From: Ranitomeya imitator
Lineage: Eukaryota
Assembly (NCBI RefSeq): GCF_032444005.1
Contig: NC_091287.1
Location: 381,238,001 to 381,302,000 of the forward strand
DNA: 64,000 nucleotides
Direction: 5' to 3'
Shown here: positions 1 to 55,405 of the stretch, piece by piece
Layout of the letters: every line of letters begins with the position of its first letter
Numbering within the stretch: the stretch's first letter is position 1
Program-made: the position numbers and the translations under genes
Notes under the pieces: generated by a model
What the model was told of the DNA's origin: nothing
Databases searched by the model: none
What the model saw: the letters and a program-made list of their open reading frames with translations, nothing else

Positions 1-120
1 ACATGATAATATTATCTTAAACAATACTAAATACCACCACCTCTAAAGAGTGATCTTTAAGGCACACCTTCCAACAGAGTGCAGGAATAAGTAACTAAAT
101 ACAGGGGGGGGGGAATGTAT

Positions 121-205
121 GGGTGCTGTCGTGGACTCTATAAAATCCTATTACCGGTACGTAAAAACCGGTTTTCCTATCGCCACGACAGCACCCACAA
201 CGAGA
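121..205 (-). other. DIRS internal complementary region (ICR) with 14-bp hairpin stem
   Basis: 172-205 is complementary to the element 5' end; 121-134 gggtgctgtcgtgg pairs with 183-196 ccacgacagcaccc. Confidence 0.8.
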
Positions 206-221
206 GACTTTCAAAGACTAT

Positions 222-1002
222 TTAACTGGGAGGGACCACAGCACTAAGTACTGAACGGCCAAATTGTAAGCTGGAATTAGCTGATAGATCAAGGCGATAG
301 TGCTTATAAAAGGTGGAAGGTGATGACCAAGTTGCCGCCTTACATATCATTTCAATGGGGACATCTGCCTTCTCCGCCCAGGATGATGCCATAGCCCGAG
401 TGGAGTGCGCCCTGATGCCTTCTGGTGGTGTTACTCCCCTGGCAGAGTAGGCAAGACATATCGCTTCTCTAATCCATCTAGCGATAGAGTTCTTCGTGAC
501 CCCAGAACCTTTTTTCTGATTCTGGAAAGAAACAAACAGAGCCCTACTCTGTCTCCAGCTTTGTGTCCTGTCCAGGTATTCTAATATCGCCCTCTTTACA
601 TCTAGAGTATGATATTTTTTCTCCTCTTCTGAACCTGGATTTTCATAGAAAGATGGTAAATAAATCTCCTGACTTCTATGAAATTTAGTTGCTACTTTTG
701 GCAAATATGCAGAATCGGGTTTTAGGACAATCTTATCCTGGAGAATTATTAGATAGGGAGGATCTACTGATAACGCATGTATATCACTGACCCTCCTGGC
801 AGATGTTAAGGCTAAGAGTAGAGCTGTTTTTAAGGTTAAATTTTTTATAGAAATAGAGTCTAATGGCTCGAACGGAGGTTCAGTCAATGCCTCAAGTACC
901 AAATTTAAATCCCAAGGGGGTATTCTTACAATATGGATTGGGTTCGAACGCTGACATGCCTTAATAAACCTAGCAACCCATCTATTACCAGCTTTATCAC
1001 TG
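222..1002 (-). pseudogene. DIRS tyrosine recombinase, C-terminal catalytic part
   Basis: ORF 222..902 has LTSARRVSDIHAL (catalytic R), RAHSTRAMASSWA (HxxR) and TWSSPSTFYKHY (W/Y). The frame stays open upstream to ~1002 (SDKAGNRWVARFIKACQRSNP...PPWDLNLVL). Confidence 0.92.
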
Positions 1003-1005
1003 TAA

Positions 1006-1784
1006 GGCTATATTCACACTTAGCGGTTTTTACCGCGGAACCGCCGCGATTTTGATGCTGTGGGTCCGCAGCAGTTTCCATAGCGTTTACAGTAACATGT
1101 AAACCCTATGGAAACCGCAAACCGCTGTGCACATGCTGCGGGAAAAACCGCGCGGGAACGCAGCGGTTTACAACCCGCAGCATGTCACTTCTTTGTGCAG
1201 AATCGCTGCGATTCTGCACCCGTAGGAATACATTGAACCGCTTACTTCCCGCATGGGGCTGTGCCCACGTTGCGGGAAGTAAGCGGATAATGTGCGGGTG
1301 GTACCCGGGGTGGAGGAGAGGAAACTCTCCTCCAGGCCCTGGGAACCATATTTGGGGTTAAAAAATAAAAAATCTGGTTATACTCACCCTCTGATGTCCG
1401 GAGCTCCTGGGCGCTGCACGCGGCCGTCCGGTCAGAGTTGCTGTGCGACCAGGACCTGCGGTGACGTCGCGGTCACATGACCGTGACGTCACGAAGGGTC
1501 CTTCTCCCACAGCATCTTAGGAACCGGACCGCCGGGTGCAGCGCCCAGGAGATCCGGACATCAGAGGGTGAGTATAACCAATTTTTATTATTTTTAACAT
1601 TACTATTGATGCTGCATATTGCTGCATATGCAGCATCAATAGTATAGGCGGAAACCCGCAGCGGAAAACGCGGAACAAACCGCGATAAATCTGCAGGGAG
1701 AACCGCAGTTGTTTTGCCCTGCAGATTTATCAAATCCGCTGCGGGAGAACCCGCAGGGACCCGACGCAAGGTGTGAACATAGCC
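1006..1784. mobile_element. Palindromic non-autonomous DNA transposon (PIF/Harbinger-like MITE) inserted in the YR gene
   Basis: TIR ggctatattcacac / gtgtgaacatagcc, internal inverted arms, flanks TAA (1003-1005) and TTA (1785-1787). Confidence 0.75.
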
Positions 1785-1789
1785 TTATA

Positions 1790-3355
1790 CAGGTCCTTCT
1801 CAAAAAATTAGCATATAGTGTTAAATTTCATTATTTACCATAATGTAATGATTACAATTAAACTTTCATATATTATAGATTCATTATCCACCAACTGAAA
1901 TTTGTCACGTCTTTTATTGTTTTAATACTGATGATTTTGGCATACAACTCCTGATAACCCAAAAAACCTGTCTCAATAAATTAGCATATTTCACCCATCC
2001 AATCAAATAAAAGTGTTTTTTAATAACAAACAAAAAAACCATCAAATAATAATGTTCAGTTATGCACTCAATACTTGGTCGGGAATCCTTTGGCAGAAAT
2101 GACTGCTTCAATTCGGCGTGGCATGGAGGCAATCAGCCTGTGACACTGCTGAGATGTTATGGAGGCCCAGGATGCTTCAATAGCGGCCTTAAGCTCATCC
2201 AGAGTGTTGGGTCTTGCGTCTCTCAACTTTCTCTTCACAATATCCCACAGATTCTCTATGGGGTTCAGGTCAGGAGAGTTGGCAGGCCAATTGAGCACAG
2301 TAATACCATGGTCAGTAAACCATTTACCAGTGGTTTTGGCACTGTGAGCAGGTGCCAGGTCGTGCTGAAAAATGAAATCTTCATCTCCATAAAGCATTTC
2401 AGCCGATGGAAGCATGAAGTGCTCCAAAATCTCCTGATAGCTAGCTGCATTGACCCTGCCCTTGATGAAACACAGTGGACCAACACCAGCAGCTGACATG
2501 GCACCCCACACCATCACTGACTGTGGGTACTTGACATTGGACTTCAGGCATTTTGGCATTTCCTTCTCCCCAGTCTTCCTCCAGACTCTGGCACCTTGAT
2601 TTCCGAATGACATGCAAAATTTGCTTTCATCAGAAAAAAGTACTTGGGACCACCTAGCAACAGTCCAGTGCTGCTTCTCTGTAGCCCATTTCGGCACCTG
2701 TAGCCCATTTCCTGCACACGCCTGTGCACGGTGGCTCTGGATGTTTCCACACCAGACTCAGTCCACTGCTTCCTCAGGTTCCCCAAGGTCTGGAATCGGT
2801 CCTTCTCCACAATCTTCCTCAGGGTCCGGTCTCCTCTTCTCGTTGTACAGCGTTTTCTGCCACATTGTTTCCTTCCAACAGACTTACCATTGAGGTGCCT
2901 TGATACAGCACTCTGGGAACAGCCTATTTGTTGAGAAATTTCTTTCTGGGTCTTACCCTCTTGCTTGAGGGTGTCAATGATGGCCTTCTTGACATCTGTC
3001 AGGTCGCTAGTCTTACCCATGATGGGGGTTTTGAGTAATGAACCAGGCAGGGAGTTTATAAAAGCCTCAGGTATCTTTTGCATGTGTTTAGAGTTAATTA
3101 GTTGATTCAGAAGATTAGGGTAATAGGTCGTTAAACTTTAGAGAACCTTTTCTTGATATGCTAATTTATTGAGACAGGTTTTTTGGGTTATCAGGAGTTG
3201 TATGCCAAAATCATCAGTATTAAAACAATAAAAGACGTGACAAATTTCAGTTGGTGGATAATGAATCTATAATATATGAAAGTTTAATTGTAATCATTAC
3301 ATTATGGTAAATAATGAAATTTAACACTATATGCTAATTTTTTGAGAAGGACCTG
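1790..3355 (-). mobile_element. Tc1-family DNA transposon inserted in the YR gene
   Basis: ~200-bp ITRs starting caggtccttctcaaaaaattagcatatagtg; TA TSD at 1788-1789 and 3356-3357. Confidence 0.95.
2068..3020 (-). pseudogene. Tc1 DD34E transposase with an internal deletion/frameshift near 2690
   Basis: MGKTSDL HTH N-terminus (ATG 3020) is in one frame; FSDESKF, FQHDLAPAH and SPDLNPIENLW (34 residues between D and E) are in ORF 2068..2697. Confidence 0.93.
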
Positions 3356-3357
3356 TA

Positions 3358-3600
3358 CAGAGCCCCCAAGGCTGAAACGTGAACTCTCAGTGTTGACTGC
3401 TAAACCCAATTCCCAGCCTTTCTGAAGGAATTCTAGAATAGCTGAAATCGGAGCCTTATCTCCTAATGGTTGCTGATGAAACATAAGGAATTTTTTCCAA
3501 ATTTTTGTATAGATCTTTGTAGTAATCTCCTTTCTGCTTTTCAATAAGGTAGTAATTAAAGCATTGGAGAACCCCCTCTCCTTCAGAAGCTCCCTCTCAA
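3358..3600 (-). pseudogene. DIRS tyrosine recombinase N-terminal part (1-bp frameshift near 3395)
   Basis: ORF 3302..3961 contains LLKERGFSNALITTLLKSRKEITTKIYTKIWKKF...AILEFLQKGWELGLAVNT; a shifted frame gives (L)RVHVSALGALY up to the Tc1 TA. Confidence 0.8.
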
Positions 3601-4594
3601 GTTCCAAGCCGTTAAGTGAAGAGTCTCCAAATTTGGATGACGAAACGGACCTTGAGAAAGGAGCTCCGGAACCACTGGCAACACCCAGGGATCCGTCACT
3701 GACATCGTTCTGAGGAGAGAGAACCAAGGCCTCCTGGGCCAGAAGGGGGCGATTAGGATCACTCTGGCTCCTTCTTCCCGAATCTTCCTGAGAGCTATCG
3801 GAATCAGGCACATAGGAGGAAAGGCATAAGCCAGCTGGAAGTCCCAACGGACACGAAGGGAATCCACTATGAATGGTTGGTCTGCCATGTGTAAGGATGC
3901 GAACCTCCTGACCTTCCTGTTCTTTCTCGTAGCAAATAGGTCTATTATCGGCAAACCCCACAGATCAACTATTTGATCGAATACCTGTTGGTCTAGGGAC
4001 CAGTCTCCCTGACGAAGGGAATGGCGACTGAGATAGTCCGCCTCTATATTGAGTTCTCCTTTTATATGAACTGCCGACAGGGATTGTAAGTGATTCTCGG
4101 CCAGAGACAATATCTGTGCTGTAGTGGTCATTAGGGATAGAGATCTTGTCCCCCCCTGATGATTGATATAGGCTACCACAGTCATATTGTCTGTTTGTAT
4201 CTGTACATGTGCATTCCTCAGGGATGGTAGTAAGCAAAGAAGAGCCTGTTTGACTGCCACAAGCTCTCAGATTTGAGGAATACTGGGATTCTTGAATCGA
4301 CCATTTCCCTTGGGTCAGAATGTCCTCCATATGGGCTCCCCAACCAAACGGACTGGCATCTGTTGTAATTACATTGTTCGGAGTGATGGTCCAGAGAACC
4401 CCTTTTGACAGATGTGCCAGATCGAGCCACCATCTTAGATCGTGAAGAGTGGCGGGTGATAGATCGAATTTTCTGCTCAGAGCACCATGAAGATCTTTCT
4501 CCGCTTGAAGAACCTCGTATTGAAGCATTCGAGTGTGAACCTGAGCCCATCTCACTGCCGATATACACGCAGTTAAAGATCCTAGTAGAGACAT
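3583..4594 (-). pseudogene. DIRS RNase H plus N6-adenine-methyltransferase-like domain (frameshifted ~4260)
   Basis: VITTDASPFGWGAH (ORF 3965..4594); QIQTDNMTVVAYINHQGGTRS, NIEADYLSR, IDLFAT, AYAFPP and VILIAPFWPRRPWF (ORF 3583..4260). Confidence 0.9.
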
Positions 4595-5620
4595 TGCGTC
4601 TCAAACTTAAGTTTGGAATTTTCCTTACAGCCCTGATTCTTTGGATAATCTTCTGCTTCTTCTCTTCTGGTAGGAAGGATGACTGGTCTTCTGAGTCTAG
4701 CAGAACTCCTAGAAAGATCTGACGTCTTGTGGGTTCTAGTTTTGATTTTTCCCAGTTGACTATCCACCCGAGTTCCTGTAGGGATGATATTATGGCATTT
4801 ACCCTACATGTACACTGAGCAATTGAATTTCCGATTATCAAAAAATCATCTAGATAGGGCACTACAAGGGTTTCCTTTTCCCTAATATGGGCCATTACTT
4901 CCGAGATAACTTTAGTAAAAATTCTAGGTGCCATGGATAGGCCAAAGGGCATTGCCAAATATTGGAAATGTTTAATCTGATGGTTTACCCATACTGCCAT
5001 CCTGAGGAATTGCTGGTGATTTCTGTGAACTGGAAGATGGTAGTACGCATCTTTTAGATCCAAGACCGACATGTAGCACCTAGGAAACAAAAGCTTAGTT
5101 GTTGACTTAATGGATTCCATCTTAAAAGCGTGGTACTGAAGATATCTATTCAATTTACGTAAATTTATGATAGTCCTAAAGGACCCATCAGGTTTAGAGA
5201 TTAAGAATAGCGGAGAATAAAAGCCCGTCTTCTCCTGATGTTTTGGTACTTCTTCAATAACCCGCTTTGTAAGCAATTGTTGGATCTCTAATTCTAAGGC
5301 CTGTTGTTGGGCCGGCGTGTCCAGTGATGTTATCACAAAATGATTTGGTGGAGTTCTCAAAAATTCTAATTTTAATCCTGACTCAACCACCCCCATTATC
5401 CAGGCACTAGAAGTAATCTTTTCCCATTTTTCTGAGAAGAACTTTAGTCTTCCCCCTACTGGTAGATCAGTATTATCTGTAATTACGTCTACGTCTTGAG
5501 AAAGATGGAGGGTTCTTATAGTATCCACCTTTCTTCTTTTGATCCGATGTTTCCCAGTCGCGATTATTTCCCTGCTGGTCTGACTGGAATCTTCTGAAGG
5601 GAATGCGTCTCCGGAAGGCA
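4595..5620 (-). pseudogene. DIRS reverse transcriptase (frameshift ~4595 into RNase H frame)
   Basis: ORF 4218..5759: PVGGRLKFF, FYSPLFLISKPDGSFRTIINL, LDLKDAYYH, MPFGLSMAPRIFTK, VPYLDDFLI. Confidence 0.93.
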
Positions 5621-6699
5621 TTCCTAAAAGTGGGATTAAATGTTTTAGGGAATCCCTTCTTTCTGTCTTCTGCCTTTGCCAGGATGTCATCCAGCACCGG
5701 GCCGAATAGGTACTCACCCCTACATGGAATGGAGCACAATTTAGCTTTTGCCTGAGCATCCCCCTTCCAGGTCTTCAGCCAAAGTGCCCGTCGGGCTGCG
5801 TTTGAGAGACCCGCAGATCTTGCAGCCAATTTCAGGGAATCAATCGATGCATCCGCTAGATAAGCCGCTCCTTCCCTGATCTGAGACAGGGAGTTTAACA
5901 ATTTATCCCTGGGTACTTTTGCTTTAAGCTGCTCCTCCAGCTGAGTTACCCAGACCATAACTGATCTTGCCGTACAGGTGCCTGCGATTGCGGGCTTAAA
6001 GGCTCCAGATGATGCTTCCCACACCTTCTTAAGGAGCATGTCAGCCTTCCTGTCTGAAGGATCTTTAAGGAGTCCTACATCCTCCAATGGTAGCGAGCCT
6101 GTTTTCGAGGTAGAGGCTACTGCCGCATCTATTTTTGGGATCTTCATCCACTGGGATAAGGTGTCATCTTCAAAGGGGTACCTTCTTTTTGCGGCCGAAG
6201 GTAAGAACCCTTTATCCAGTTTGTCCCACTCCCGTTTGACCAGATCTTTAATGGTCTCTACTACCGGGAAAGCTTTGCGACTTCTCTGGCTCAGCCCTGC
6301 GAACATGATTTCCTGGGTTGTCTTAGGCTCTTTACTCTCAGCTACATCCATCGTCGCACGGACTGCCTTAATTAAAGCCTCCATATTATCTGTGGCAAAG
6401 CAAGGCCTTCCTTCCTCATCTGAGGAGGATGGTGATGAACTCTCCGAGCACTCGCCCTCTTGCAATGAAGGGCTGGAATCGGATACCATATCCATACTAA
6501 TTTTCTCATGCCGTTTAGATTTAAGAGAAGATTTTATCTCTTCCCTGATTACTTCCCTCAAATCCGATACACGAAGGGGGGCCTCTTCCTCTAACGTGCG
6601 GCATATACACGTCTGACATAATCTCTTTACATAGGTGTCAGGTAGTGGTTCCATGCATAATGCACACTGCTTATGTTTGGATTTTGAGACCTTCTTCCC
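5473..6699 (-). CDS. DIRS gag-like ORF1, main exon (probably spliced to an upstream exon 6785-6919)
   Basis: 393-aa ORF 5473..6654 with ARSAGLSNAARRALWLKTW and YLFGPVLDDIL; the frame extends to an AG acceptor at 6700-6701 and includes CALC...CQTC. Confidence 0.85.
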   Translation of the reverse strand, partial: GKKVSKSKHKQCALCMEPLPDTYVKRLCQTCICRTLEEEAPLRVSDLREVIREEIKSSLKSKRHEKISMDMVSDSSPSLQEGECSESSSPSSSDEEGRPCFATDNMEALIKAVRATMDVAESKEPKTTQEIMFAGLSQRSRKAFPVVETIKDLVKREWDKLDKGFLPSAAKRRYPFEDDTLSQWMKIPKIDAAVASTSKTGSLPLEDVGLLKDPSDRKADMLLKKVWEASSGAFKPAIAGTCTARSVMVWVTQLEEQLKAKVPRDKLLNSLSQIREGAAYLADASIDSLKLAARSAGLSNAARRALWLKTWKGDAQAKAKLCSIPCRGEYLFGPVLDDILAKAEDRKKGFPKTFNPTFRNAFRRRIPFRRFQSDQQGNNRDWETSDQKKKGGYYKNPPSFSRRRRNYR

Positions 6700-9601
6700 C
6701 TACAATAAAACATAGTATAGAAGACAATTGTATCAGCCAGTGGCTCAGATATAACACTCACCACTGCTGATGAAATTAGAGTACCGGTTTCTGAGGGGGT
6801 GAGGTGCGATGTGGCGTGCCAGGATCCTGCTGCCCGCGTGCCACATCTCCACTCTGAGATCTGCTGCTGCTCCTTTGCTGCTCTCCTTTTTGGTGTTCGG
6901 CGTCTCCTGTGGAAGACATATCGCCGCACACCACTCACCAAGCGCTGCCTTCTTTTCAAGGGTCCCGCGCTCCTCCTCCCGGCCTCCTCCGGAAGTCGTT
7001 AGCTCACTTCCGGGTCATAAGCGCCGACCTGCTCCCGCAGTGTCGCGCGCGTGTGGACGACCCAGGGCGGCGTGCCTTCCCCTGGGAACGCCACCTCAGC
7101 GTTCAGCCGCTCCTTGCCAGACGAGGGGGGAAGCTGGACACAGAACTTCCCCCGACGCTGCTTCCGGGCCCCCGACTCTGCCGTTCTCACCTGGACACCG
7201 CACAGAGGCTTGGCGGACCCAGGTAGGTGAAACGACCTGTAGGCTCCCGCCGTCCGGACAGGAACCCAAAACTGGAGGGCGACCGCCCCTTTTTAACCTG
7301 TAGGTTCCTGTCCGGAAGGTGGGCGGATCCCCTCTCTCGTTGTGGGTGCTGTCGTGGCGATAGGAAAAACTCAGTTTTTAGCTGAAAGTACGGTATATAC
7401 AAATTATAAAAACCGATCCATGTGTGTTGTACAGTATTACACACAGGACTTTCACACACCATTTGTCCTCAGTTTTGCTATACTGGACCCTCCACTATGT
7501 CAAACATAAGGTAGACCAAAAGGCACAGAATGTTCAAATAAAATACCCTTTATTTATACATCCCAAAAAGGCAACAATTCTACCCTTTCAAGCTAAAACG
7601 GACACGCTGTGTGTTGGCTTCACAAATGTGTCAGAAAACTTAACACTTACCCCGCGCAAGACACATATGCTGAAAAGATCCAAGGCGCCATACATCTTAA
7701 ATAGAAACCTCACTTTCCACACTTTATAAACAAGCAAAAATATGAAGCTCTAAATTTCCTTTGAGAGGTATTCCCCACTTATCAGTCACTTCTCTAATGC
7801 ACTGTGGAATATGTTAGCGCTATATAAAAATAAAGATTATTACCGTATAATAATGATAATGAATAATAACAATAACCGATAATTCACTTAAAAACTGCTC
7901 AAATCTGCCTACAGATCCGTCTACAGTAAATGGTCAGATTACATATGCTGCCTATAGAAATCTTCGAGTGAGGGAGGAAGGAGAAAGCTAAATTGAGAAC
8001 ACTGAGTGAAAAAAAAAAATAAGCTCCAAATTAAAACAAATCATAGGGGCTATTAAAAAATAAAACTGATGCAAGTTATATAAATAACAGAAATAGCATT
8101 ATTCCTCATGGACACAGACATTATAGGTAATAAAGTCACCTGAAAGTGAAGGTGAATTTACACTGGTCAATAATCTGTCAGATTCCAAGGGCAACAACCT
8201 ATTGCTCACAATAATTGCGTAATGTGTATAGCTTAAGTGAAAACGTGTATAAAAAAAATAAAAAGTTCATTGTGCATGAAATAGTTTAAGTGAGCGAAAA
8301 CAAAATTCCCGTTCATATTTAAGAATTAAACTATTAGGCAGCAGGAGGAGTGGAAAGATCATGATGCAACCATTTAATTTGCCATTCTTGAACAACATCG
8401 CTTGGTAGTCGCGAGTTACGATTATCTGATCATGAAAACAGACCAAAGTCAAGACCATTAAGTCCACAACACGCACAGGCCTCTTGACCTGAGTTCAACC
8501 ACCTTCCGATCATATACGAGATTGGTGAATTTGGATTGGAAGACCTCTCCTGGTTCTGATATTGCGATCCGTGAAAGTTGGATGTGTGAAACAGTTCTTA
8601 CTCTTGAAGTGGTCCCCTTATGCCAATTGGGAATTTTTATGAAAGGCACACTGCATACTGAAGAATTCCATAAAATTTACACAGACACTTTAAGAGGTGG
8701 CCCACTACGACAGGCACCCATTTAAACAAAGTAGTCCCCTTTATAAAAATAAAACACAAATGCATTATGTCACATGAGCCCTGCAACCAGGGGCGGATTA
8801 TAATAGGGTCAATGTGGGCGGTAGCCCAGGGCCCAGTGGTGTGGGCGAGTCCTGGGCTACCGCTCAGATTGCCTGCCGCCATCAGGGAATTACTGCCCTG
8901 ACTGACGTATGGGCCCGGTGGGCAGAGGGGGCACGCATCAGGCCCCGTCTCGTCTGCTCACTGGGCCCCTACCGGCCTGACGTCATTGTCAGTCGCTGGC
9001 GAGTGCGCGCTGCTGGAGGGAGCTCGCCGCTGGAGAGCACAGGTCAGGTGAGGAGAACTCGTTTTTTTTTTTTTGCTAACCGCAATCCGGGGGCCCGGGC
9101 GGGGCAGATTGCTGGAGGACACTGGGGGCAATGCTGGAGACACTGGGGAAGATTGCTGGACACACTGTCTGGGGGCAATGCTGGACATACTGAGGCAGAT
9201 TGCTGGACAAACTGGGGGTAATATGCTGGACACACTGTCTGGGGGCAATGCTGGACACCGGGGCAGATTGCTGGACACACTGGGGCAGATTGCTGGACAC
9301 ACTGGGGGCAGGACTGGAGGCATGGGCAGAATGTAGATACGGGGCATGATTGGAGACACGGGGCAGAATGAAAGACATGGTGCAGGATTGGATCATGGGG
9401 CAGGATGGATACGATTGAGACAGATGGGGCAGGAAGGGGAGATCACATGGGGTAGAATGGATAATCATGAGGGCAGGATGCGAGAACATATGGCTGGAGC
9501 CAGGAATGAGAAACGGGGCCAGGATGGGGAATATTATTACCATAGGGGCTAATTAAGGGATATTATTACTGCAGTGATGTATTTATTTTATTTTTTGAGT
9601 A

Positions 9602-14339: not shown

Positions 14340-17095
14340 GGGGTCTATATGGCTGAAAATACCCAAAAGTGACACCATTCTAAAAACTGCACCCCTCAAG
14401 GTGCACAAAACCACATTCAAGAAGTTTATTAACCCTTCAGGTGCTTCACAGCAGCAGAAGCAACATGGAAGGAAAAAATGAACATTTAACTTTTTAGTCA
14501 CAAAAATGATTTTTCAGCAACAATTTTTTTATTTTCCCAATGGTAAAAGGAGAAACTGAACCACGTACGTTGTTGTCCAATTTGTCCTGAGTACGCTGAT
14601 ACCTCATATGTGGGGGTAAACCACTGTTTGGGCGCACGGCAGGGCTTGGAAGGGAAGGAGCGCCATTTGACTTTTTGAATGAAAAATTGGCTGCACTCTT
14701 TAGCGGACACCATGTCACATTTGGAGAGCCCCCGTGTGCCTAAAAATTGGAGCTCCCCCACAAGTGACCCCATTTTGGAAACTAGACGCCCCAAGGAACT
14801 TATCTAGATGCATAGTGAGCCCTTTAAACCCCCAGGTGCTTCACAAATTGATCCGTAAAAATGAAAAAGTACTTTTTTTTCACAAAAAAATTCTTTTAGC
14901 CTCAATTTTTTCATTTTCACATGGACAACAGGATAAAATGGATCCTAAAATTTGTTTGGCAATTTCTCCTGAGTACACCGATACTTCACATGTGGGGGTA
15001 AACCACTGTTTGGGCACATGGTAAGGCTCGGAAGGGAAGGAGCGCCATTTGACTTTTTGAATGAAAAATTATCTCCATCGTTAGCGGACACCATGTCGCG
15101 TTTGGAGAGACCCTGTGTGCTTAAACATTGGAGCTCCCCCACAAGTGACCCCATTTTGGAAACTGGACCCCCCAAGGAACTTATCTAGATGCCTAGTGAG
15201 CACTTTAAACCCTCAGGTGCTTCACAAATTGATCCGTAAAAATGAAAAAGTACTTTTTTTTCACAAAAAATTTATTTTCGCCTCAATTTTTTCATTTTCA
15301 CATGGGCAATAGGATAAAATGGATCCTAAAATTTGTTGAGCAATTTCTCCCGAGTACGCCGATACCTCATATGTGGGGGTAAACCACTGTTTGGGCACAC
15401 GGCAGGGCTCGGAAGGGAAGGCGCGCCTTTTAACTTTTTGAATGGAAAATTAGCTCCAATTGTTAGCGGACACCATGTCGCATTTGGAGAGCCCCTGTGT
15501 GCCTATGCAATGGAGCTCCCCCACAAGTGACCCCATTTTGGAAACTAGACCCCCCAAGGAACTTATCTAGATGCATACTGAGCACTTTAAACCCCCAGGT
15601 GCTTCACAGAAGTTTATAATGCAGAGCCATGAAAATAAAAAATAATTTTTCTTTTCTCAAAAATGATTTTTTAGCCTGGAATTTCCTATTTTGCCAATGG
15701 TAATAGGAGAAATTGGACCACAAATGTTGTTGTCCAGTTTGTCCTGAGTATGCAGATACCCCATATGTGGGGGTAAACCACTGTTTGGGCGCATGGCAGG
15801 GCTCAGAAGGGAAGGCACGCCATTTGGCTTTTTAAATGGAAAATTATCTCCAATCATTAGCGGACACCATGTCGCGTTTGGAGAGCCCCTGTGTGCCTAA
15901 ACATTGGAGATCCCCCACAAATTACCCCATTTTGGAAACTAGACCCCCAAAGGAACTAATCTAGATGTGTAGTGAGCACTTTGAACCCTCAAGTGCTTCA
16001 CAGAAGTTTATAACGCAGAGCCATAAAAATAAAAAATTATTTTCTCAAAAATGAATTTTAGCCCGCAATTTTTTATTTTCCCAAGGGTAACAGGAGAAAT
16101 TTGACCCCAAAAGTTGTTGTCCAGTTTCTCCTGAGTACGCTGATACCCCATATGTGGGGGTAAACCACTGTTTAGGCACATGCTGGGGCTCGGAAGTGAA
16201 GTAGTGACGTTTTGAAATGCAGACTTTGATGGAATGCTCTGTGGGCGTCACGTTGCGTTTGCAGAGCCCCTGATGTGGCTAAACAGTAGAAACCCCACAC
16301 AAGTGACCCCATTTTGGAAACTAGACCCCGAAAGGAACTTATCTAGATGTGAGGTGAGCACTTTGAACCCCCAAGTGCTTCACAGAAGTTCATAACACAG
16401 AGCAGTGAAAATAATAAATACGTTTTCTTTCCTCAAAAATAATTTTTTAGCCCAGAATTTTTTATTTTCCCAAGGGTTACAGGAGAAATTGGACCACAAA
16501 AGTTGTTGTCCAGTTTCTCCTGAGTACGCTGATACCCCATGTGTGGGGGTAAACCACTGTTTGGGCACACGTGGGGGCTCAGAAGGGAAGTAGTGACTTT
16601 TGAAATGCAGACTTTGATGGAATGGTCTGCGGGCGTCACGTTGCGTTTGCAGAGCCCCTGGTGTGCCTAAACAGTAGAAACCCCCCACAAGTGACCCCAT
16701 TTTGGAAACTAGACCCCCCAAGGAACTTATCTAGATATGTGGTGAGCACTTTGAACCCCCAAGTGCTTCACAGACGTTTACAACGCAGAGCCGTGAAAAT
16801 AAAAAATCATTTTTCTTTCCTCAAAAATGATGTTTTAGCAAGCAATTTTTTATTTTCTCAAGGGTAACAGGAGAAATTGGACCCCAGTAATTGTTGTGCA
16901 GTTTGTCCTGAGTATGCTGGTACCCCATATGTGGGGGTAAACCACTGTTTGGGCACACGTCGGGGTTCGGAAGTGAGGGAGCACCATTTGAATTTTTGAA
17001 TACAAGATTGGCTGGAATCAATGGTGGCGCCATGTTGCGTTTGGAGACCCCCTGAAGTGCCTAAACAGTGGAAACCCCTCAATTCTACCTCCAAC
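14340..17095. repeat. ~380-395-bp tandem repeat (about 7 diverged copies) internal to the piggyBac-like element
   Basis: aagtgaccccattttggaaact recurs at ~14762, 15142, 15527, 15921, 16301 and 16689; atgtgggggtaaaccactgtttgg recurs in each unit. Confidence 0.9.
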
Positions 17096-17098
17096 ACA

Positions 17099-17225
17099 CC
17101 CCTAACCCTTATCCCAACTGTAGCCGTAACCCTAATCACAACCCTAACCCCAACACACCCCTAACCACAACCCTAACCCCAACACACCCCTAACCCTAAC
17201 CACAACCCTAATTCCAACCCAACTC
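17099..17225 (+). repeat. Degenerate telomere-like (CCCTAA)n tract
   Basis: ccctaacc units interspersed with ccccaacacac. Confidence 0.7.
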
Positions 17226-17228
17226 TAA

Positions 17229-17926: not shown

Positions 17927-17930
17927 GAAA

Positions 17931-18026
17931 CCCTAACCCTAGCCCTAACCCTAACCCTAACCCTACCCCTAACCCTAACCTTACCCCTATTCCTACCCCT
18001 AACCCTACCCCTAACCCTAACCCTAG
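17931..18026 (+). repeat. Telomere-like (CCCTAA)n tract with variant hexamers
   Basis: About 16 hexamers: ccctaa, ccctag, ccctac, ccttac. Confidence 0.85.
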
Positions 18027-52229: not shown

Positions 52230-53896
52230 TTAAAGCAGCACTCCAACATTTCAGCGCTGGAGTGGTGCCAGTAATGTGCTCACCAGCCGCTGTCTTCTGC
52301 TGTTCCTGGCGCCACTCTGGGCCTGCACCGTCATCTTGTGACCGCGACTTCTAACTGACCGGAAGTCACAAGCTCTCCATGCAGGCCTACGAGATCCGTC
52401 TTCTGGTCCTCAGACTTGCATTGAGCTGTGACTTCCGGCTCACACAGCAAACACTGGAGAAATCTGGGAAGTCACAACCCGCAGACGACCAACCAGAGCG
52501 GAGCCGATAACAGATGAATATGGCGGCTGCTAAGGATATGACTAAGGGCAGGAAACTTAGATTAGTTGCATCACTCTATAAAAAACCCACTGCAGTTGGG
52601 ATTGACACTTTTTTTGTTTTTTATCTTGGAGATGTACGTCTTTTGTGGCATGAACATGTAAGGAATATGTGCCATCTTCGTGGTATGCTGCATTTTGGAT
52701 CAACCCCAAAATTTGCCCAAAAAAACTCACAGGAAACAAAGTTTCTTGAACACAACCTGTACAGTATTTTGCTAAAAATCGTAAAGTAACATCTCGTTAT
52801 CATATATTTGACCAAAAGGAAAACAAAAAAGTGGCCCCATTGATCAAATTTCAATTTTTGTCTTTTTGCAAATATAAGGTTGGAGATTTCTCAAACTTCT
52901 GCTTCAGTGCAAAATAGACATCACTAAGATGCCATCCGGACAATGGCCAGGATTTTCAGACTCAGACTTGCATTGAAAAGTTTGATGTGTGACTCTGATG
53001 ATAAACAGACTTTATTTTTTGCAGGGTGGGGGGGGGGGGGGTATTGGTTGACAATGACCTCTGGTCTGCAAAATAGACATGGTAACAGCCCTTGCAGACT
53101 AATGGGTACAATTATGATGGACGTTAAGGGCACTTATTCCTCAGCACCGCTTTTTAATGGCACTGAGAAATAAGGGTATAGCGACCCCAGCGTCAGAAAA
53201 TCTCTGGGGTCTCTGCTACCGGGGGTAGCCGAGACCCCGGAGAAGATGATTCGGGTTGGTTTTTACTGTCCTTAGTCTCATGATCAGTTATTCACGGAAT
53301 AACGGCAATCACAAAAAAAAAAGATTCCCATTCATTTCTCTCTCCTCTGATATGATCTAGCATACCAGGGGAGAGAGAAATTGGGTCCTCTGAGCCCTCC
53401 GGTATCCCCGGACACTCCAGTGTCATCCCCCAGCATGTTTTTCCTATTGGTTCATTTTGATCACTTTGATAAGGTCTATCACAGTGATCAAAGTAAAAAA
53501 AAGTAAATTAAACCCCCCTTCATCTCCCACGTAGTTAGGATAAAATAAAAAAAGTATTTATTTCCATTAGGATTAGGGTTGGGTTAACTGTTAGGGGTGT
53601 GTTGGAGTTATAATTGAGGGATTCCACTGTTTAGGTACATCAGGGGGTCTCCAGACGCGACATGGCTCCCACCATTGATTCCAGCCAATTTTGCGTTCAA
53701 AAAGTCAAACGGTGCTCCCTCCCTTCTGAGCCCTGCTGTGCGCCTAAACAGTGGCTTTCCCCCACATACGGGGTATTAGTGTACTCAAGAGAAACTGCAC
53801 AACAAATTTTCTGGTTCATTTTCCCCTGTTACCCTTGTGAATATAAAAAAAAAAGTTTGGGTCTAAAGTAATTTTTTTTTGTGAAAAAAAAGTTAT

Positions 53897-54649
53897 AATA
53901 GAATTAGTCTTAGGCTATGTGCACACGTTCAGGATTTCTTGCAGAAAATTCCTGAGAATTCTGGACATTTTCTGCAAGAAAACCGCATGCGTTTTTGCCG
54001 CGGTTTTTTCCGGACACTTCCCAATGCATTTTGGAGTGGGAAATCCGCAAAAAAAAACGGAAAATTAATGAACATGCTGCGTTTTTTGCCGCGATGCGTT
54101 TTTTTCGCGGAAAAAAACGCATCATGTGCACAAAACATGCGGAATTCATTCTAAATGATGGGATGCTTATTGTATGCGGTTTTATAGCATTTTTATCGGG
54201 AAAAACCGCAACGTGTGAATACAGCCTGACTGGTAATTCGGTTTCTAGGAACCTTCCATGACAGCAGTATCGGAGGATGTCTCCCCGCCCTAATGAGGGA
54301 CAGGAAACACAGAGGTTAAATACCCCTCCCCTTCCTGCAACCATTAGTGATTTTTCTGGACACAGTAGCATGTATAATTACCACTCAACAAGTGCAGGAA
54401 TAATCCAATAAGAATATCAGATAGTGCTGTTGTGGAAGGTTCCTAGAAACCGAATTACCGGTAAGACTAATTCTATTTTTTCCAGTCACCTTCCACGGCA
54501 TCACTATGCAGTACCTCTTCATGCCCCATAGGGGGCAGATAAATACTGGTGGTTGTAGGGAGGGGTATTTAACCTCTTTGTGTTTCCTGTCCCCCATTAG
54601 GGCGGGGAGACATCCTCCGATACTGCTGTTGTGGAAGGTGACTGGAAAA
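53897..54649 (-). mobile_element. Miniature non-autonomous DIRS element (ITRs + ICR, no ORFs), interrupted by a MITE
   Basis: ITRs 54252-54345 / 54546-54638; ICR 54424-54504 equals the junction of the two termini. Confidence 0.75.
53913..54226. mobile_element. Harbinger-like MITE inside the mini-DIRS 3' extension
   Basis: ggctatgtgcacacg / cgtgtgaatacagcc; flanks TTA/TGA. Confidence 0.75.
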
Positions 54650-55405
54650 ATGTTTTTTCCTTCCACATTGCTTTAGTTTGCGTGAAGCACCTGAAGGGTT
54701 AATAAACTTCTTGAATGTGGTTTTGTGCATCTTGAGGGGTGCAGACTTTAGAATGGTGTCACTTTTGGGTATTTAATGTTATATTGACCCCCAAACTCAC
54801 TTCAAATGTGATGTGGTCCCTAAAAACAAATGGTTTTCTAAATTTTGTTGGAAAAACTAGAAATTGCCAGTCAACTTTTAACCCTTATAACGTCCTAACA
54901 AAAAAAAATATTTCCAAAATTGTGCGGTTGTAAAGTTGACATGTGGGAAATGTTATTTATTAACTATTTTGTGTGACATAGCTCTCTGATTTAAGGGCAC
55001 AAAAATTAAGATTGAAAATTGCACAAAGTTCCAAATTTTTGCCAAACTTCCGTTTTTGTTTTTTTTTTCATAAATGAATGCAAGTCACATCGAAACTTTT
55101 TTACCACTAACATGAAGTACGATATGTCCCGAAAAAAATAATCTCAATCAGTTGAATCCATTGAAGCATTCCAGAGCTATAACTTTAAAGTGAAAGTGGT
55201 CAGACTTGTAAAAGTTGACCCGGTCACTAAGAGGTTAAGCTGTGTGGTTTTGTTTACTTGCAGGGATTGTTTAGCACTAGGAGCTCATCATTGCTGGACA
55301 CAAACTCCTGGCAGATTCCCCCTCCTGTGATAAGCACCTCACTGGCTATAGCCATGTACACACAGCATAGTTCAATGCTTTGCATTGCTAAATCCAAAAA
55401 GCTGA

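What the first reader, a model, noticed from the sequence alone, without database searches (positions are those of the whole stretch)
53897..54649. ~440-bp miniature DIRS retroelement that keeps the complete replication signals but no genes
Seen: two ~90-bp inverted terminal repeats (54252-54345, 54546-54638) and an ICR (54424-54504). The ICR sequence ...ggaaggttcctagaaaccgaattaccggtaagactaattctatt|ttttccagtcaccttccac... is the join of the 3' end (53897-54255 once the MITE at 53913-54226 is removed) and the 5' end (54631-54649). There is no TSD and the site is A/T-rich inside an older piggyBac-like repeat. Established: ITR + ICR is the architecture DIRS elements use to make circular cDNA for YR integration. 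Inference: this is a TRIM/MITE-like non-autonomous DIRS parasite mobilised in trans, from a different family than the full DIRS at 1-7368.
Basis: partly seen in the sequence, partly recalled or inferred. Interest (0 to 1): 0.75.

Follow-up and report, generated by a model that had tools for sequence, protein, structure and literature searches.

The report
Gene-less miniature DIRS retroelement copy
A 438-base remnant of a poison-frog DIRS jumping gene keeps both inverted ends and the internal end-repair signal but has lost every gene; the structure is real and cleanly inserted, but nothing I could run shows that it multiplied as a miniature parasite family.

Summary
After removing a nested 314-bp MITE, window 53897-54651 is a 438-nt element. 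[quoted passage not shown] It has no usable ORF.

Its sense strand is the minus strand. It begins and ends with ATT, has AAT at the ICR junction, no left extension, a 28-nt right extension and ICR halves of 31+60 nt. This is the published layout of Xenopus DIRS1-like elements.

A paralogous empty site in the same window carries AAT once where the filled site carries it twice. That is the DIRS1-like 3-bp recombination signature, with no target-site duplication (TSD).

The coding region was lost between the 5' ITR and the ICR, at about 54508-54515. It was not lost in the longer spacer.

Logan contigs from three related frogs show that the ITR, ICR and both spacers are multi-copy. The dominant contigs stop at about 54511, so most relatives continue differently there. 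No second copy of the mini junction was demonstrated.

Verdict: a real, old (~14-24 My) deletion derivative. The family claim is untested. The scan noted another mini-DIRS (s1-279836) elsewhere in this genome.

The parts
54536..54651 (-). 5' ITR (sense nt 1-116). It begins with ATT, which reads AAT at 54649-54651 on the plus strand. It carries a TATA-like GGTTAAATA about 30 nt before its inner end.
   Evidence: 85% identity to the other arm; sense map. The ATT start matches Table 3 of PMC3266345. The promoter role is inference.
54508..54535 (-). Spacer 1 (sense nt 117-144), 28 nt. This is all that remains between the 5' ITR and the ICR. It holds a GC hairpin (CUGCCCCCUAUGGGGCAUG inside a longer stem) and the deletion junction at about 54508-54515.
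   Evidence: fold -21.1 kcal/mol, z = -2.7. (dominant contigs covering 54540-54560 end at 54508-54513 in all four runs).
54417..54507 (-). ICR. 54477-54507 is complementary to the first 31 nt of the element. 54417-54476 is complementary to its last 60 nt. The junction trinucleotide is AAT in sense.
   Evidence: the definition is in PMC8969392 and PMC9210276.
54359..54416 (-). Spacer 2 (sense nt 236-293), the normal stretch between the ICR and the 3' ITR.
   Evidence: Contigs in X1, X3 and X10 run from the ITR through this spacer into the ICR (record 4 and the from_end values).
54242..54358 (-). 3' ITR (sense nt 294-410).
53897..54241 (-). 28-nt right extension of the 3' end. It is split by the MITE into 54230-54241 plus 53897-53912. 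It ends with ATT, which reads AAT at 53897-53899 on the plus strand.
   Evidence: the MITE-free left end matches the reverse complement of the ICR at 55/61 positions.
53913..54226 (.). Nested 314-bp MITE, inserted later, with flanking TTA (53910-53912) and TGA (54227-54229) as a decayed 3-bp TSD.
   Evidence: One search shows high depth and shows that other copies' 3' ends lack it.
53578..53896 (.). Left part of the host repeat (381-bp unit family) into which the element inserted.
   Evidence: Summed contig depth is 1e5-1e6 in all frog runs.
54652..55213 (.). Right part of the same host repeat.
   Evidence: with the element removed, 53623-55213 aligns colinearly to 14751-13919 (79% over 856 nt).
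14484..14486 (-). AAT at the paralogous empty site. The empty site reads gtta-AAT-gttcattttttcc; the filled site reads gttat-AAT[element]AAT-gttttttcc.

Best explanation
This is a genuine DIRS1-like (ITR/ICR-type, tyrosine-recombinase) retroelement copy that has lost its whole ~5-kb interior: gag, RT/RNase H/MT and YR. It keeps the 5' ITR, 28 nt of leader with a hairpin, the complete ICR, the ICR-ITR spacer, the 3' ITR and the 28-nt right extension, 438 nt in all. Its sense strand is the minus strand. It entered a copy of a 381-bp host repeat by the normal DIRS route, that is, recombination between the 3-bp junction sequence and an identical AAT/ATT in the target, which leaves no TSD. That step is shown by the empty paralogous site. 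From ICR-versus-terminus divergence, the last templating of the ends was roughly 14-24 My ago. This is inference: it uses a rate of 2.5e-9 and assumes the ends were copied from the ICR. A MITE landed in the right extension later. I think the mini form is most likely a one-off or very-low-copy product. It would have arisen either from an RT template jump from just upstream of the ICR to about 25 nt downstream of the 5' ITR, or from a later deletion in place, rather than being an amplified non-autonomous family. The copy is now decayed and inactive.
For: Architecture. Orientation and layout match the published DIRS1-like elements, with ATT/ATT/AAT, no left extension, a right extension of ~30 nt and a short-then-long ICR (PMC3266345 Table 3, PMC9210276). 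They also match the coding DIRS in the same window. Precise insertion with a shared AAT: plus many contigs joining 53890 to 54653. The parent family exists and differs at the junction. Spacer 1 and spacer 2 have similar summed depth in each run (X1 3354 vs 2697-6372; X3 1277 vs 745-3505; X9 173 vs 82-248). The dominant contigs over 54540-54560 end at 54508-54513 in all four runs. Nearly all the depth at 54540 and 54544 carries letters other than the window's; only 51-59 of ~1900 in X1 and 21-23 of ~930 in X3 carry the window's letters. There is no second copy in the 64-kb window. Another mini-DIRS in this genome that was followed up (s1-307365) was judged a one-off. Age: 10/92 mismatches between the ICR and the ends, 4 of them CpG transitions (rate from PMC11152451).
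Against: The deletion is almost the largest possible one that spares every known cis signal, which is what selection for trans-mobilisation would produce. [quoted passage not shown] A second non-coding mini-DIRS of 544 bp was noted elsewhere in this genome (s1-279836, unchecked). The residual depth carrying the window's own letters at 54540/54544 in X1 (51-59) exceeds the depth of single listed contigs (5-18) and occurs in two organisms, so a few copies may share this variant. Contig data cannot count copies, and I could not search the genome assembly.
Confidence: 0.55

Rival explanations
1. This is a propagating non-autonomous mini-DIRS family. On this view the 438-nt unit is transcribed from the ITR promoter. 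The partner's RT copies the RNA in trans, the mini's own ICR restores its ends, and the partner's YR integrates it at ATT. This locus would then be one old member of the family.
For: All cis parts are retained and the breakpoints hug them. The insertion is precise, with ends exactly as the ICR predicts. Trans action of DIRS-1 RT and other proteins, and the ICR requirement, are shown experimentally. Non-autonomous DIRS exist (TOC1 of Chlamydomonas). Another mini-DIRS and 'non-autonomous DIRS lineage' notes exist in this genome (unchecked). A small share of contig depth in two organisms carries the window's diagnostic letters.
Against: No second copy with this junction was seen anywhere. The dominant family contigs break at the junction. 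A precise insertion is equally expected if a full-length copy inserted and was deleted afterwards.
Confidence: 0.38
2. It is not a DIRS derivative. It would instead be a long-TIR DNA transposon or foldback element, or a chance arrangement of inverted repeats.
For: It has long inverted termini and no coding capacity.
Against: A cut-and-paste element would have a TSD and would have no reason to carry an internal reverse complement of its two joined, unequal ends, including the 28-nt one-sided extension. The ATT/AAT rule and the layout match DIRS1-like elements. Motifs are shared with the coding DIRS in the window: CCACGACAGCA, TACCGGTAAT and GGACAGGAA..AGGTTAAA. BLAST E-values are 1e-31, 7e-12 and 8e-5 for the three complementarities.
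Confidence: 0.03

Closest known systems
DIRS1-like retrotransposons of Xenopus tropicalis (XtDIRS2, XtDIRS3; Repbase DIRS-n_XT families)
   Same: The ITRs are ~100-125 nt. There is no left extension and the right extension is ~30 nt. The ICR has a shorter 5' half and a longer 3' half (41-43 / 61-65 there, 31 / 60 here). The same NTT trinucleotide lies at both ends and is complementary to the ICR junction. There is no TSD (PMC3266345 Table 3; PMC9210276).
   Different: Those elements are 5.5-6.2 kb and encode gag, RT/RH/MT and YR. This one is 438 nt with no ORF. Its trinucleotide is ATT, whereas the Xenopus elements use TTT.
TOC1 of Chlamydomonas reinhardtii, an active non-autonomous DIRS-order element
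   Same: It is a DIRS-order element without its own enzymes, presumed to be mobilised by a partner (bioRxiv 10.1101/2022.06.16.496473).
   Different: From my own knowledge, not checked here: TOC1 is about 5.7 kb, has split direct repeats (PAT-like) rather than ITR+ICR, and is multi-copy and mobile. Multiplication is not shown for the frog mini.
trDIRS-1 helper/donor construct of Dictyostelium DIRS-1 (Malicki et al. 2020)
   Same: It is an engineered DIRS-1 lacking GAG, RT and RNase H coding capacity that is still reverse transcribed by endogenous RT in trans. The ICR was shown to be essential (PMC7192593).
   Different: It is an artificial construct in an amoeba, with a marker cassette and part of the interior retained. 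Completed retrotransposition of the truncated donor could not be scored there.
TRIMs / LARDs (non-autonomous LTR retrotransposons)
   Same: The concept is the same: terminal repeats plus minimal cis signals, with no genes.
   Different: They have direct LTRs, a PBS/PPT, DDE integrase and a 5-bp TSD. Here there are inverted repeats, an ICR, YR-type integration and no TSD.

Membership tests
DIRS1-like (ITR/ICR-type) retrotransposon | Imperfect inverted terminal repeats | tested here: met
   54242-54358 vs 54536-54648, 85% over 119 aligned positions, E 1.9e-31.
DIRS1-like (ITR/ICR-type) retrotransposon | An ICR near the 3' ITR whose 5' part is complementary to the start of the element and whose 3' part is complementary to its end | tested here: met
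   54477-54507 vs the 5' end at 27/31; 54417-54476 vs the MITE-free 3' end at 55/61. Definition from PMC8969392.
DIRS1-like (ITR/ICR-type) retrotransposon | No TSD; the same NTT trinucleotide at both ends, complementary to the 3-bp ICR junction and present once in the empty target | tested here: met
   In sense the ends are ATT...ATT and the ICR junction is AAT. The paralogous empty site at 14484-14486 has the trinucleotide once (rule in PMC3266345). There is a one-base discrepancy in the adjoining homopolymer run, 6 in the ICR against 5 at the 5' end.
DIRS1-like (ITR/ICR-type) retrotransposon | Encodes gag, RT/RNase H (with or without MT) and a tyrosine recombinase | tested here: not met
   Only 28 nt lie between the 5' ITR and the ICR, and the ORFs in the region are short and span non-coding parts. 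It is therefore a derivative, not an autonomous member.
DIRS1-like (ITR/ICR-type) retrotransposon | Sequence relatedness to a coding DIRS family | tested here: inconclusive
   Only short shared motifs with the coding DIRS at 1-7368, and BLAST finds no similarity.
Non-autonomous (TRIM/MITE-like) mobile family | Several copies of the same length and the same internal junction at independent loci | tested here: inconclusive
   One copy in the window. Logan contigs show the parts are multi-copy but break at the junction. No raw reads were available and there was no genome search.
Non-autonomous (TRIM/MITE-like) mobile family | An autonomous partner with matching termini | not testable with these tools
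   The evidence is indirect only: contigs sharing the 5' ITR plus 25 nt of leader end at about 54511. The ICR 22-mer was absent from the metagenome and viral collections.
MITE (the nested 314-bp insert) | Terminal inverted repeats, short TSD, no ORF, high copy number | tested here: met
   The TIR shows about 17 of the first 21 nt matching. It is flanked by TTA/TGA where the ICR predicts an uninterrupted TTACCGG. Summed contig depth is 1e5-1e6 in X1 and X3. The superfamily was not determined.

The most novel reading that the evidence does not exclude
The 438-nt unit is one member of an amplified, TRIM-like non-autonomous DIRS1-like family in dendrobatid frogs. If so, nature has already defined the minimal cis set for tyrosine-recombinase retrotransposition: ITRs, a ~25-nt leader hairpin, the ICR and the ICR-ITR spacer. 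To my knowledge and in the literature searches run here, no such sub-kilobase ITR/ICR-type family has been described.
Probability: 0.35. Interest if true: 0.65.

Novelty: new member of a known kind. Interest (0 to 1): 0.38.

Why it matters
DIRS replication is the least understood retrotransposition pathway. The primer, the packaging signal and the exact use of the ICR are all still open. A natural 438-nt element that had been mobilised would mark which sequences suffice in cis. It would also give a compact donor for helper/donor assays. As it stands, the locus is a clean textbook example of DIRS1-like end structure and of 3-bp (ATT) target recombination, verified against an empty paralogous site. 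It does not by itself show a new class of parasite.

Tried and rejected
1. I first read the depth dip at 54389 and contig record 4 (X1, 54311-54496) as a deletion junction bridged by other copies. I rejected this once the orientation was settled. That stretch is the normal ICR-spacer-3' ITR tail of any family member, and the dip is probably an indel in this copy (record 4 has 16 gap positions).

2. A word search with the 93-aa ORF that spans the junction (54388-54666, minus strand) found no candidate.

3. An exact 22-mer from the ICR was absent from metagenome contigs and viral contigs. Neither collection is expected to hold frog DNA.

4. The search of earlier findings by sequence was blank.

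5. Partner search: the RT of the window's coding DIRS found annotated DIRS proteins in Ranitomeya variabilis, R. imitator, Dendrobates tinctorius and Phyllobates terribilis.

6. Rfam gave nothing above noise.

7. I tested whether the DNA upstream of the large DIRS 5' end is a second element's 3' ITR. It is not.

8. All runs offered were Logan contigs, not raw reads. Depth cannot be read as copy number, and nothing can be said about expression. X10 is only guessed to be RNA.

Full report
**What is there.**

- Inverted arms at 54242-54358 and 54536-54648 are 85% identical over 119 aligned positions. The BLAST E-value is 1.9e-31 against the whole 64-kb window.
- The stretch 54417-54507 is the ICR. 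It is the reverse complement of the left end followed by the reverse complement of the right end.
- With the insert 53913-54226 and one TGA removed, the left end matches the ICR at 55 of 61 positions. The right end matches at 27 of 31.
- The three complementarities have E-values of 1e-31, 7e-12 and 8e-5, so this is not chance.
- No ORF of any significance lies inside, and Rfam finds nothing.
- No other copy of the mini lies in the window.

**The nested MITE.** 53913-54226 is 314 bp with terminal inverted repeats. It sits where the ICR predicts an uninterrupted TTACCGG, and TTA and TGA flank it. This is consistent with a 3-bp TSD that has since decayed. In the frog runs it is high-copy. Contigs from other copies join the ITR straight to the right extension without it (joint 54623->54425). 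It is therefore a later, private insertion.

**Orientation.** The ITR/ICR design is symmetrical under reverse complementation, so polarity has to be argued. Three points place the sense strand on the minus strand.

- Read that way, the element begins and ends with ATT and the ICR junction reads AAT. This is the commonest case in the survey of 28 DIRS1-like elements (PMC3266345 Table 3).
- Read that way, it has no left extension, a 28-nt right extension and ICR halves of 31 then 60 nt. XtDIRS2 and XtDIRS3 have no left extension, right extensions of 30-34 nt and ICR halves of 43-61 and 41-65. PMC9210276 describes ITRs of ~120 bp in Xenopus.
- The coding DIRS at 1-7368 lies on the minus strand, with a LAP2alpha-type gag, RT, RNase H-like and YR hits. 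It has the same design. Its 5' end is TTTTCCTATCGCCACGACAGCA, against TTTTCCAGTCACCTTCCACAACAGCA in the mini. The 3' half of its ICR carries the same TACCGGTAAT motif.

The sense map is 438 nt:

| Part | Sense nt | Window |
|---|---|---|
| 5' ITR | 1-116 | 54651-54536 |
| Spacer 1 | 117-144 | 54535-54508 |
| ICR | 145-235 | 54507-54417 |
| Spacer 2 | 236-293 | 54416-54359 |
| 3' ITR | 294-410 | 54358-54242 |
| Right extension | to 438 | 54241-54230 + 53912-53897 |

The genes were therefore lost between spacer 1 and the ICR, not in the longer spacer. Spacer 1, with the inner tip of the ITR, folds into a GC hairpin (-21.1 kcal/mol, z = -2.7). This recalls an unchecked note of a hairpin module just inside the left ITR of this genome's DIRS families (s1-294872).

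**Insertion.** The flanks belong to a very abundant 381-bp repeat unit that forms a 6.6-copy tandem array at 14489-17072. I found nothing that makes it piggyBac-like. With the element removed, 53623-55213 aligns colinearly to 14751-13919 (79% over 856 nt).

At the site the paralogue reads gtta-AAT-gttcattttttcc. The filled site reads gttat-AAT[element]AAT-gttttttcc. The trinucleotide occurs once in the empty site and twice in the filled site. The published model predicts exactly this: recombination between the 3-bp junction sequence and an identical genomic sequence, with no TSD (PMC3266345). Many contigs in three frog organisms also join 53890 directly to 54653. One base does not fit: the homopolymer run next to the trinucleotide has 6 bases in the ICR and 5 at the 5' end.

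**Family or one-off.** This is the crux, and I could not settle it. All the runs offered were Logan contigs, none raw reads, so depth is not copy number. What one search shows is the following.

- ITR and ICR sequences are abundant in organisms A and B and less so in C.
- The two spacers, which are specific to this family, have similar summed depth within each run. At 54537 against 54377/54402 the values are X1 3354 vs 6372/2697, X3 1277 vs 3505/745, X9 173 vs 248/82 and X10 57 vs 57/26. This fits one family that carries both spacers.
- The contig reported for differences at 54540, 54544 and 54560 lies 29, 34 and 50 letters from its end in X1, with near-identical values in X3, X9 and X10. The dominant contigs therefore stop at 54508-54513 in all four runs. 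In a de Bruijn graph that marks a point where the same sequence has at least two different continuations. It coincides with the mini's junction, so most relatives continue into something else there, presumably leader and gag.
- Almost all depth at 54540 and 54544 carries other letters than the window. Only 51-59 of about 1900 in X1, and 21-23 of about 930 in X3, carry the window's letters. That could be the orthologous locus or a handful of copies.

I first took contig record 4 (X1, 54311-54496) and a depth dip at 54389 as evidence of other minis. Once the polarity was known, that stretch turned out to be the ordinary 3' tail of any member, so it says nothing.

**Other attempts.** These either failed or were blocked.

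- A word search with the 93-aa ORF across the junction found nothing.
- An ICR 22-mer was absent from the metagenome and viral collections.
- The scan's sequence look-up was blank.
- The RT search found annotated DIRS proteins in Ranitomeya, Dendrobates and Phyllobates. This agrees with earlier notes that the genome is a poison frog's.

**Age.** If the ends were templated from the ICR at the last retrotransposition, they should then have been identical to it. That is the model, and it is supported by the experimental ICR requirement in PMC7192593. The ICR and the ends now differ at 10 of 92 positions, 4 of them CpG transitions. The rate used for Dendrobates tinctorius is 2.5e-9 per site per year (PMC11152451). 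This gives about 24 My from all sites and about 14 My from the non-CpG differences. The window copy also differs from the contig majority at many positions, for example 54259, 54344, 54345, 54350, 54377, 54402, 54431, 54540 and 54544. It is an old, dead copy.

**Mechanism.** The following is shown:

- the DIRS1-like cis architecture;
- integration at a shared ATT;
- loss of all genes.

The following is inferred.

- A TATA-like GGTTAAATA about 30 nt before the inner end of the ITR would start transcripts near the ITR tip. The RNA would then lack the 5' end and need the ICR to restore it.
- Any copying would need RT and YR from a partner. [quoted passage not shown]
- The classical circular double-stranded intermediate is a model. 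The DIRS-1 experiments saw mostly linear single-stranded cDNA (PMC7192593).
- The interior was lost in one of two ways. One is an RT template jump from just upstream of the ICR to about 25 nt past the 5' ITR. The other is a later deletion in place. Nothing here separates the two.

**Comparison and novelty.** Non-autonomous DIRS-order elements are known: TOC1 is described as an active non-autonomous DIRS retrotransposon. Three literature searches found no description of a sub-kilobase ITR/ICR-type family. The scan itself noted another non-coding mini-DIRS of 544 bp (s1-279836) and putative non-autonomous DIRS lineages (s1-288387, s1-272025) on other DNA of this genome, all unchecked. One followed-up 2-kb mini (s1-307365) was judged a one-off.

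**Odds.** I put 0.55 on a one-off or very-low-copy deletion derivative, 0.38 on a real mini family and 0.03 on something other than DIRS.

**Verdict.** The structure is real and instructive. The exciting part, a TRIM-like DIRS parasite family, is open and can be decided by one genome-wide search of the junction.

Noticed in passing
window 14489-17072, 17127-17228 and 17929-18025: The host repeat of the mini-DIRS forms a 381-bp-period tandem array of 6.6 copies. Next to it lie interstitial telomere-like (AACCCT)n and degenerate CCCTAA-type repeats.
   Followed up: partly
window 1-7368 (minus strand), especially 1788-3357 and 1-207: The coding DIRS carries a nested Tc1/mariner-like insert with 202-nt perfect inverted repeats and Tc3-type HTH hits. 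Its ICR lies at about 110-207, directly after the YR ORF. At least 110 nt follow the ICR without any ITR, so the window start cuts off its 3' ITR and it is not complete in the window.
   Followed up: partly
window 54242-54651 compared with 7200-7368 and 100-207: The two unrelated DIRS families share short motifs at equivalent places: CCACGACAGCA near the outer ITR ends, the palindrome TACCGGTA(AT) in the right extension, and GGACAGGAA..AGGTTAAA(T/A)A inside the ITR (TATA-like). These are candidate conserved cis sites for YR binding or promoter function.
   Followed up: partly
window 7369-7390; 53880-53896 with 14484-14500: The target DNA next to each DIRS end resembles the element's own opposite terminus. 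TAAAAACTGAG upstream of the large DIRS resembles its ICR-predicted 3' end TAAAAACCGG. The host site GTGACTAAAAAGTTAAAT resembles the mini's GTGACTGGAAAAAAT. This may reflect target choice by similarity to the circle junction, or chance in A-rich DNA. No 3' ITR lies upstream of the large DIRS.
   Followed up: partly
window 54495-54515: GGTACTGC-ATAGTGA-TGCCGTGG looks like a 7-nt tandem duplication (ATACTGC / ATAGTGA) at the boundary between the ICR and spacer 1. Without it the complementarity to the 5' end would extend about 8 nt further. It coincides with the place where contigs from all four runs end.
   Followed up: no
window 54069-54130 (inside the MITE): There is a CpG-containing palindrome in the MITE core (GATGCGTTTTTTTC / GAAAAAAACGCATC, 14/14, inside 26-nt arms).
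   Followed up: no
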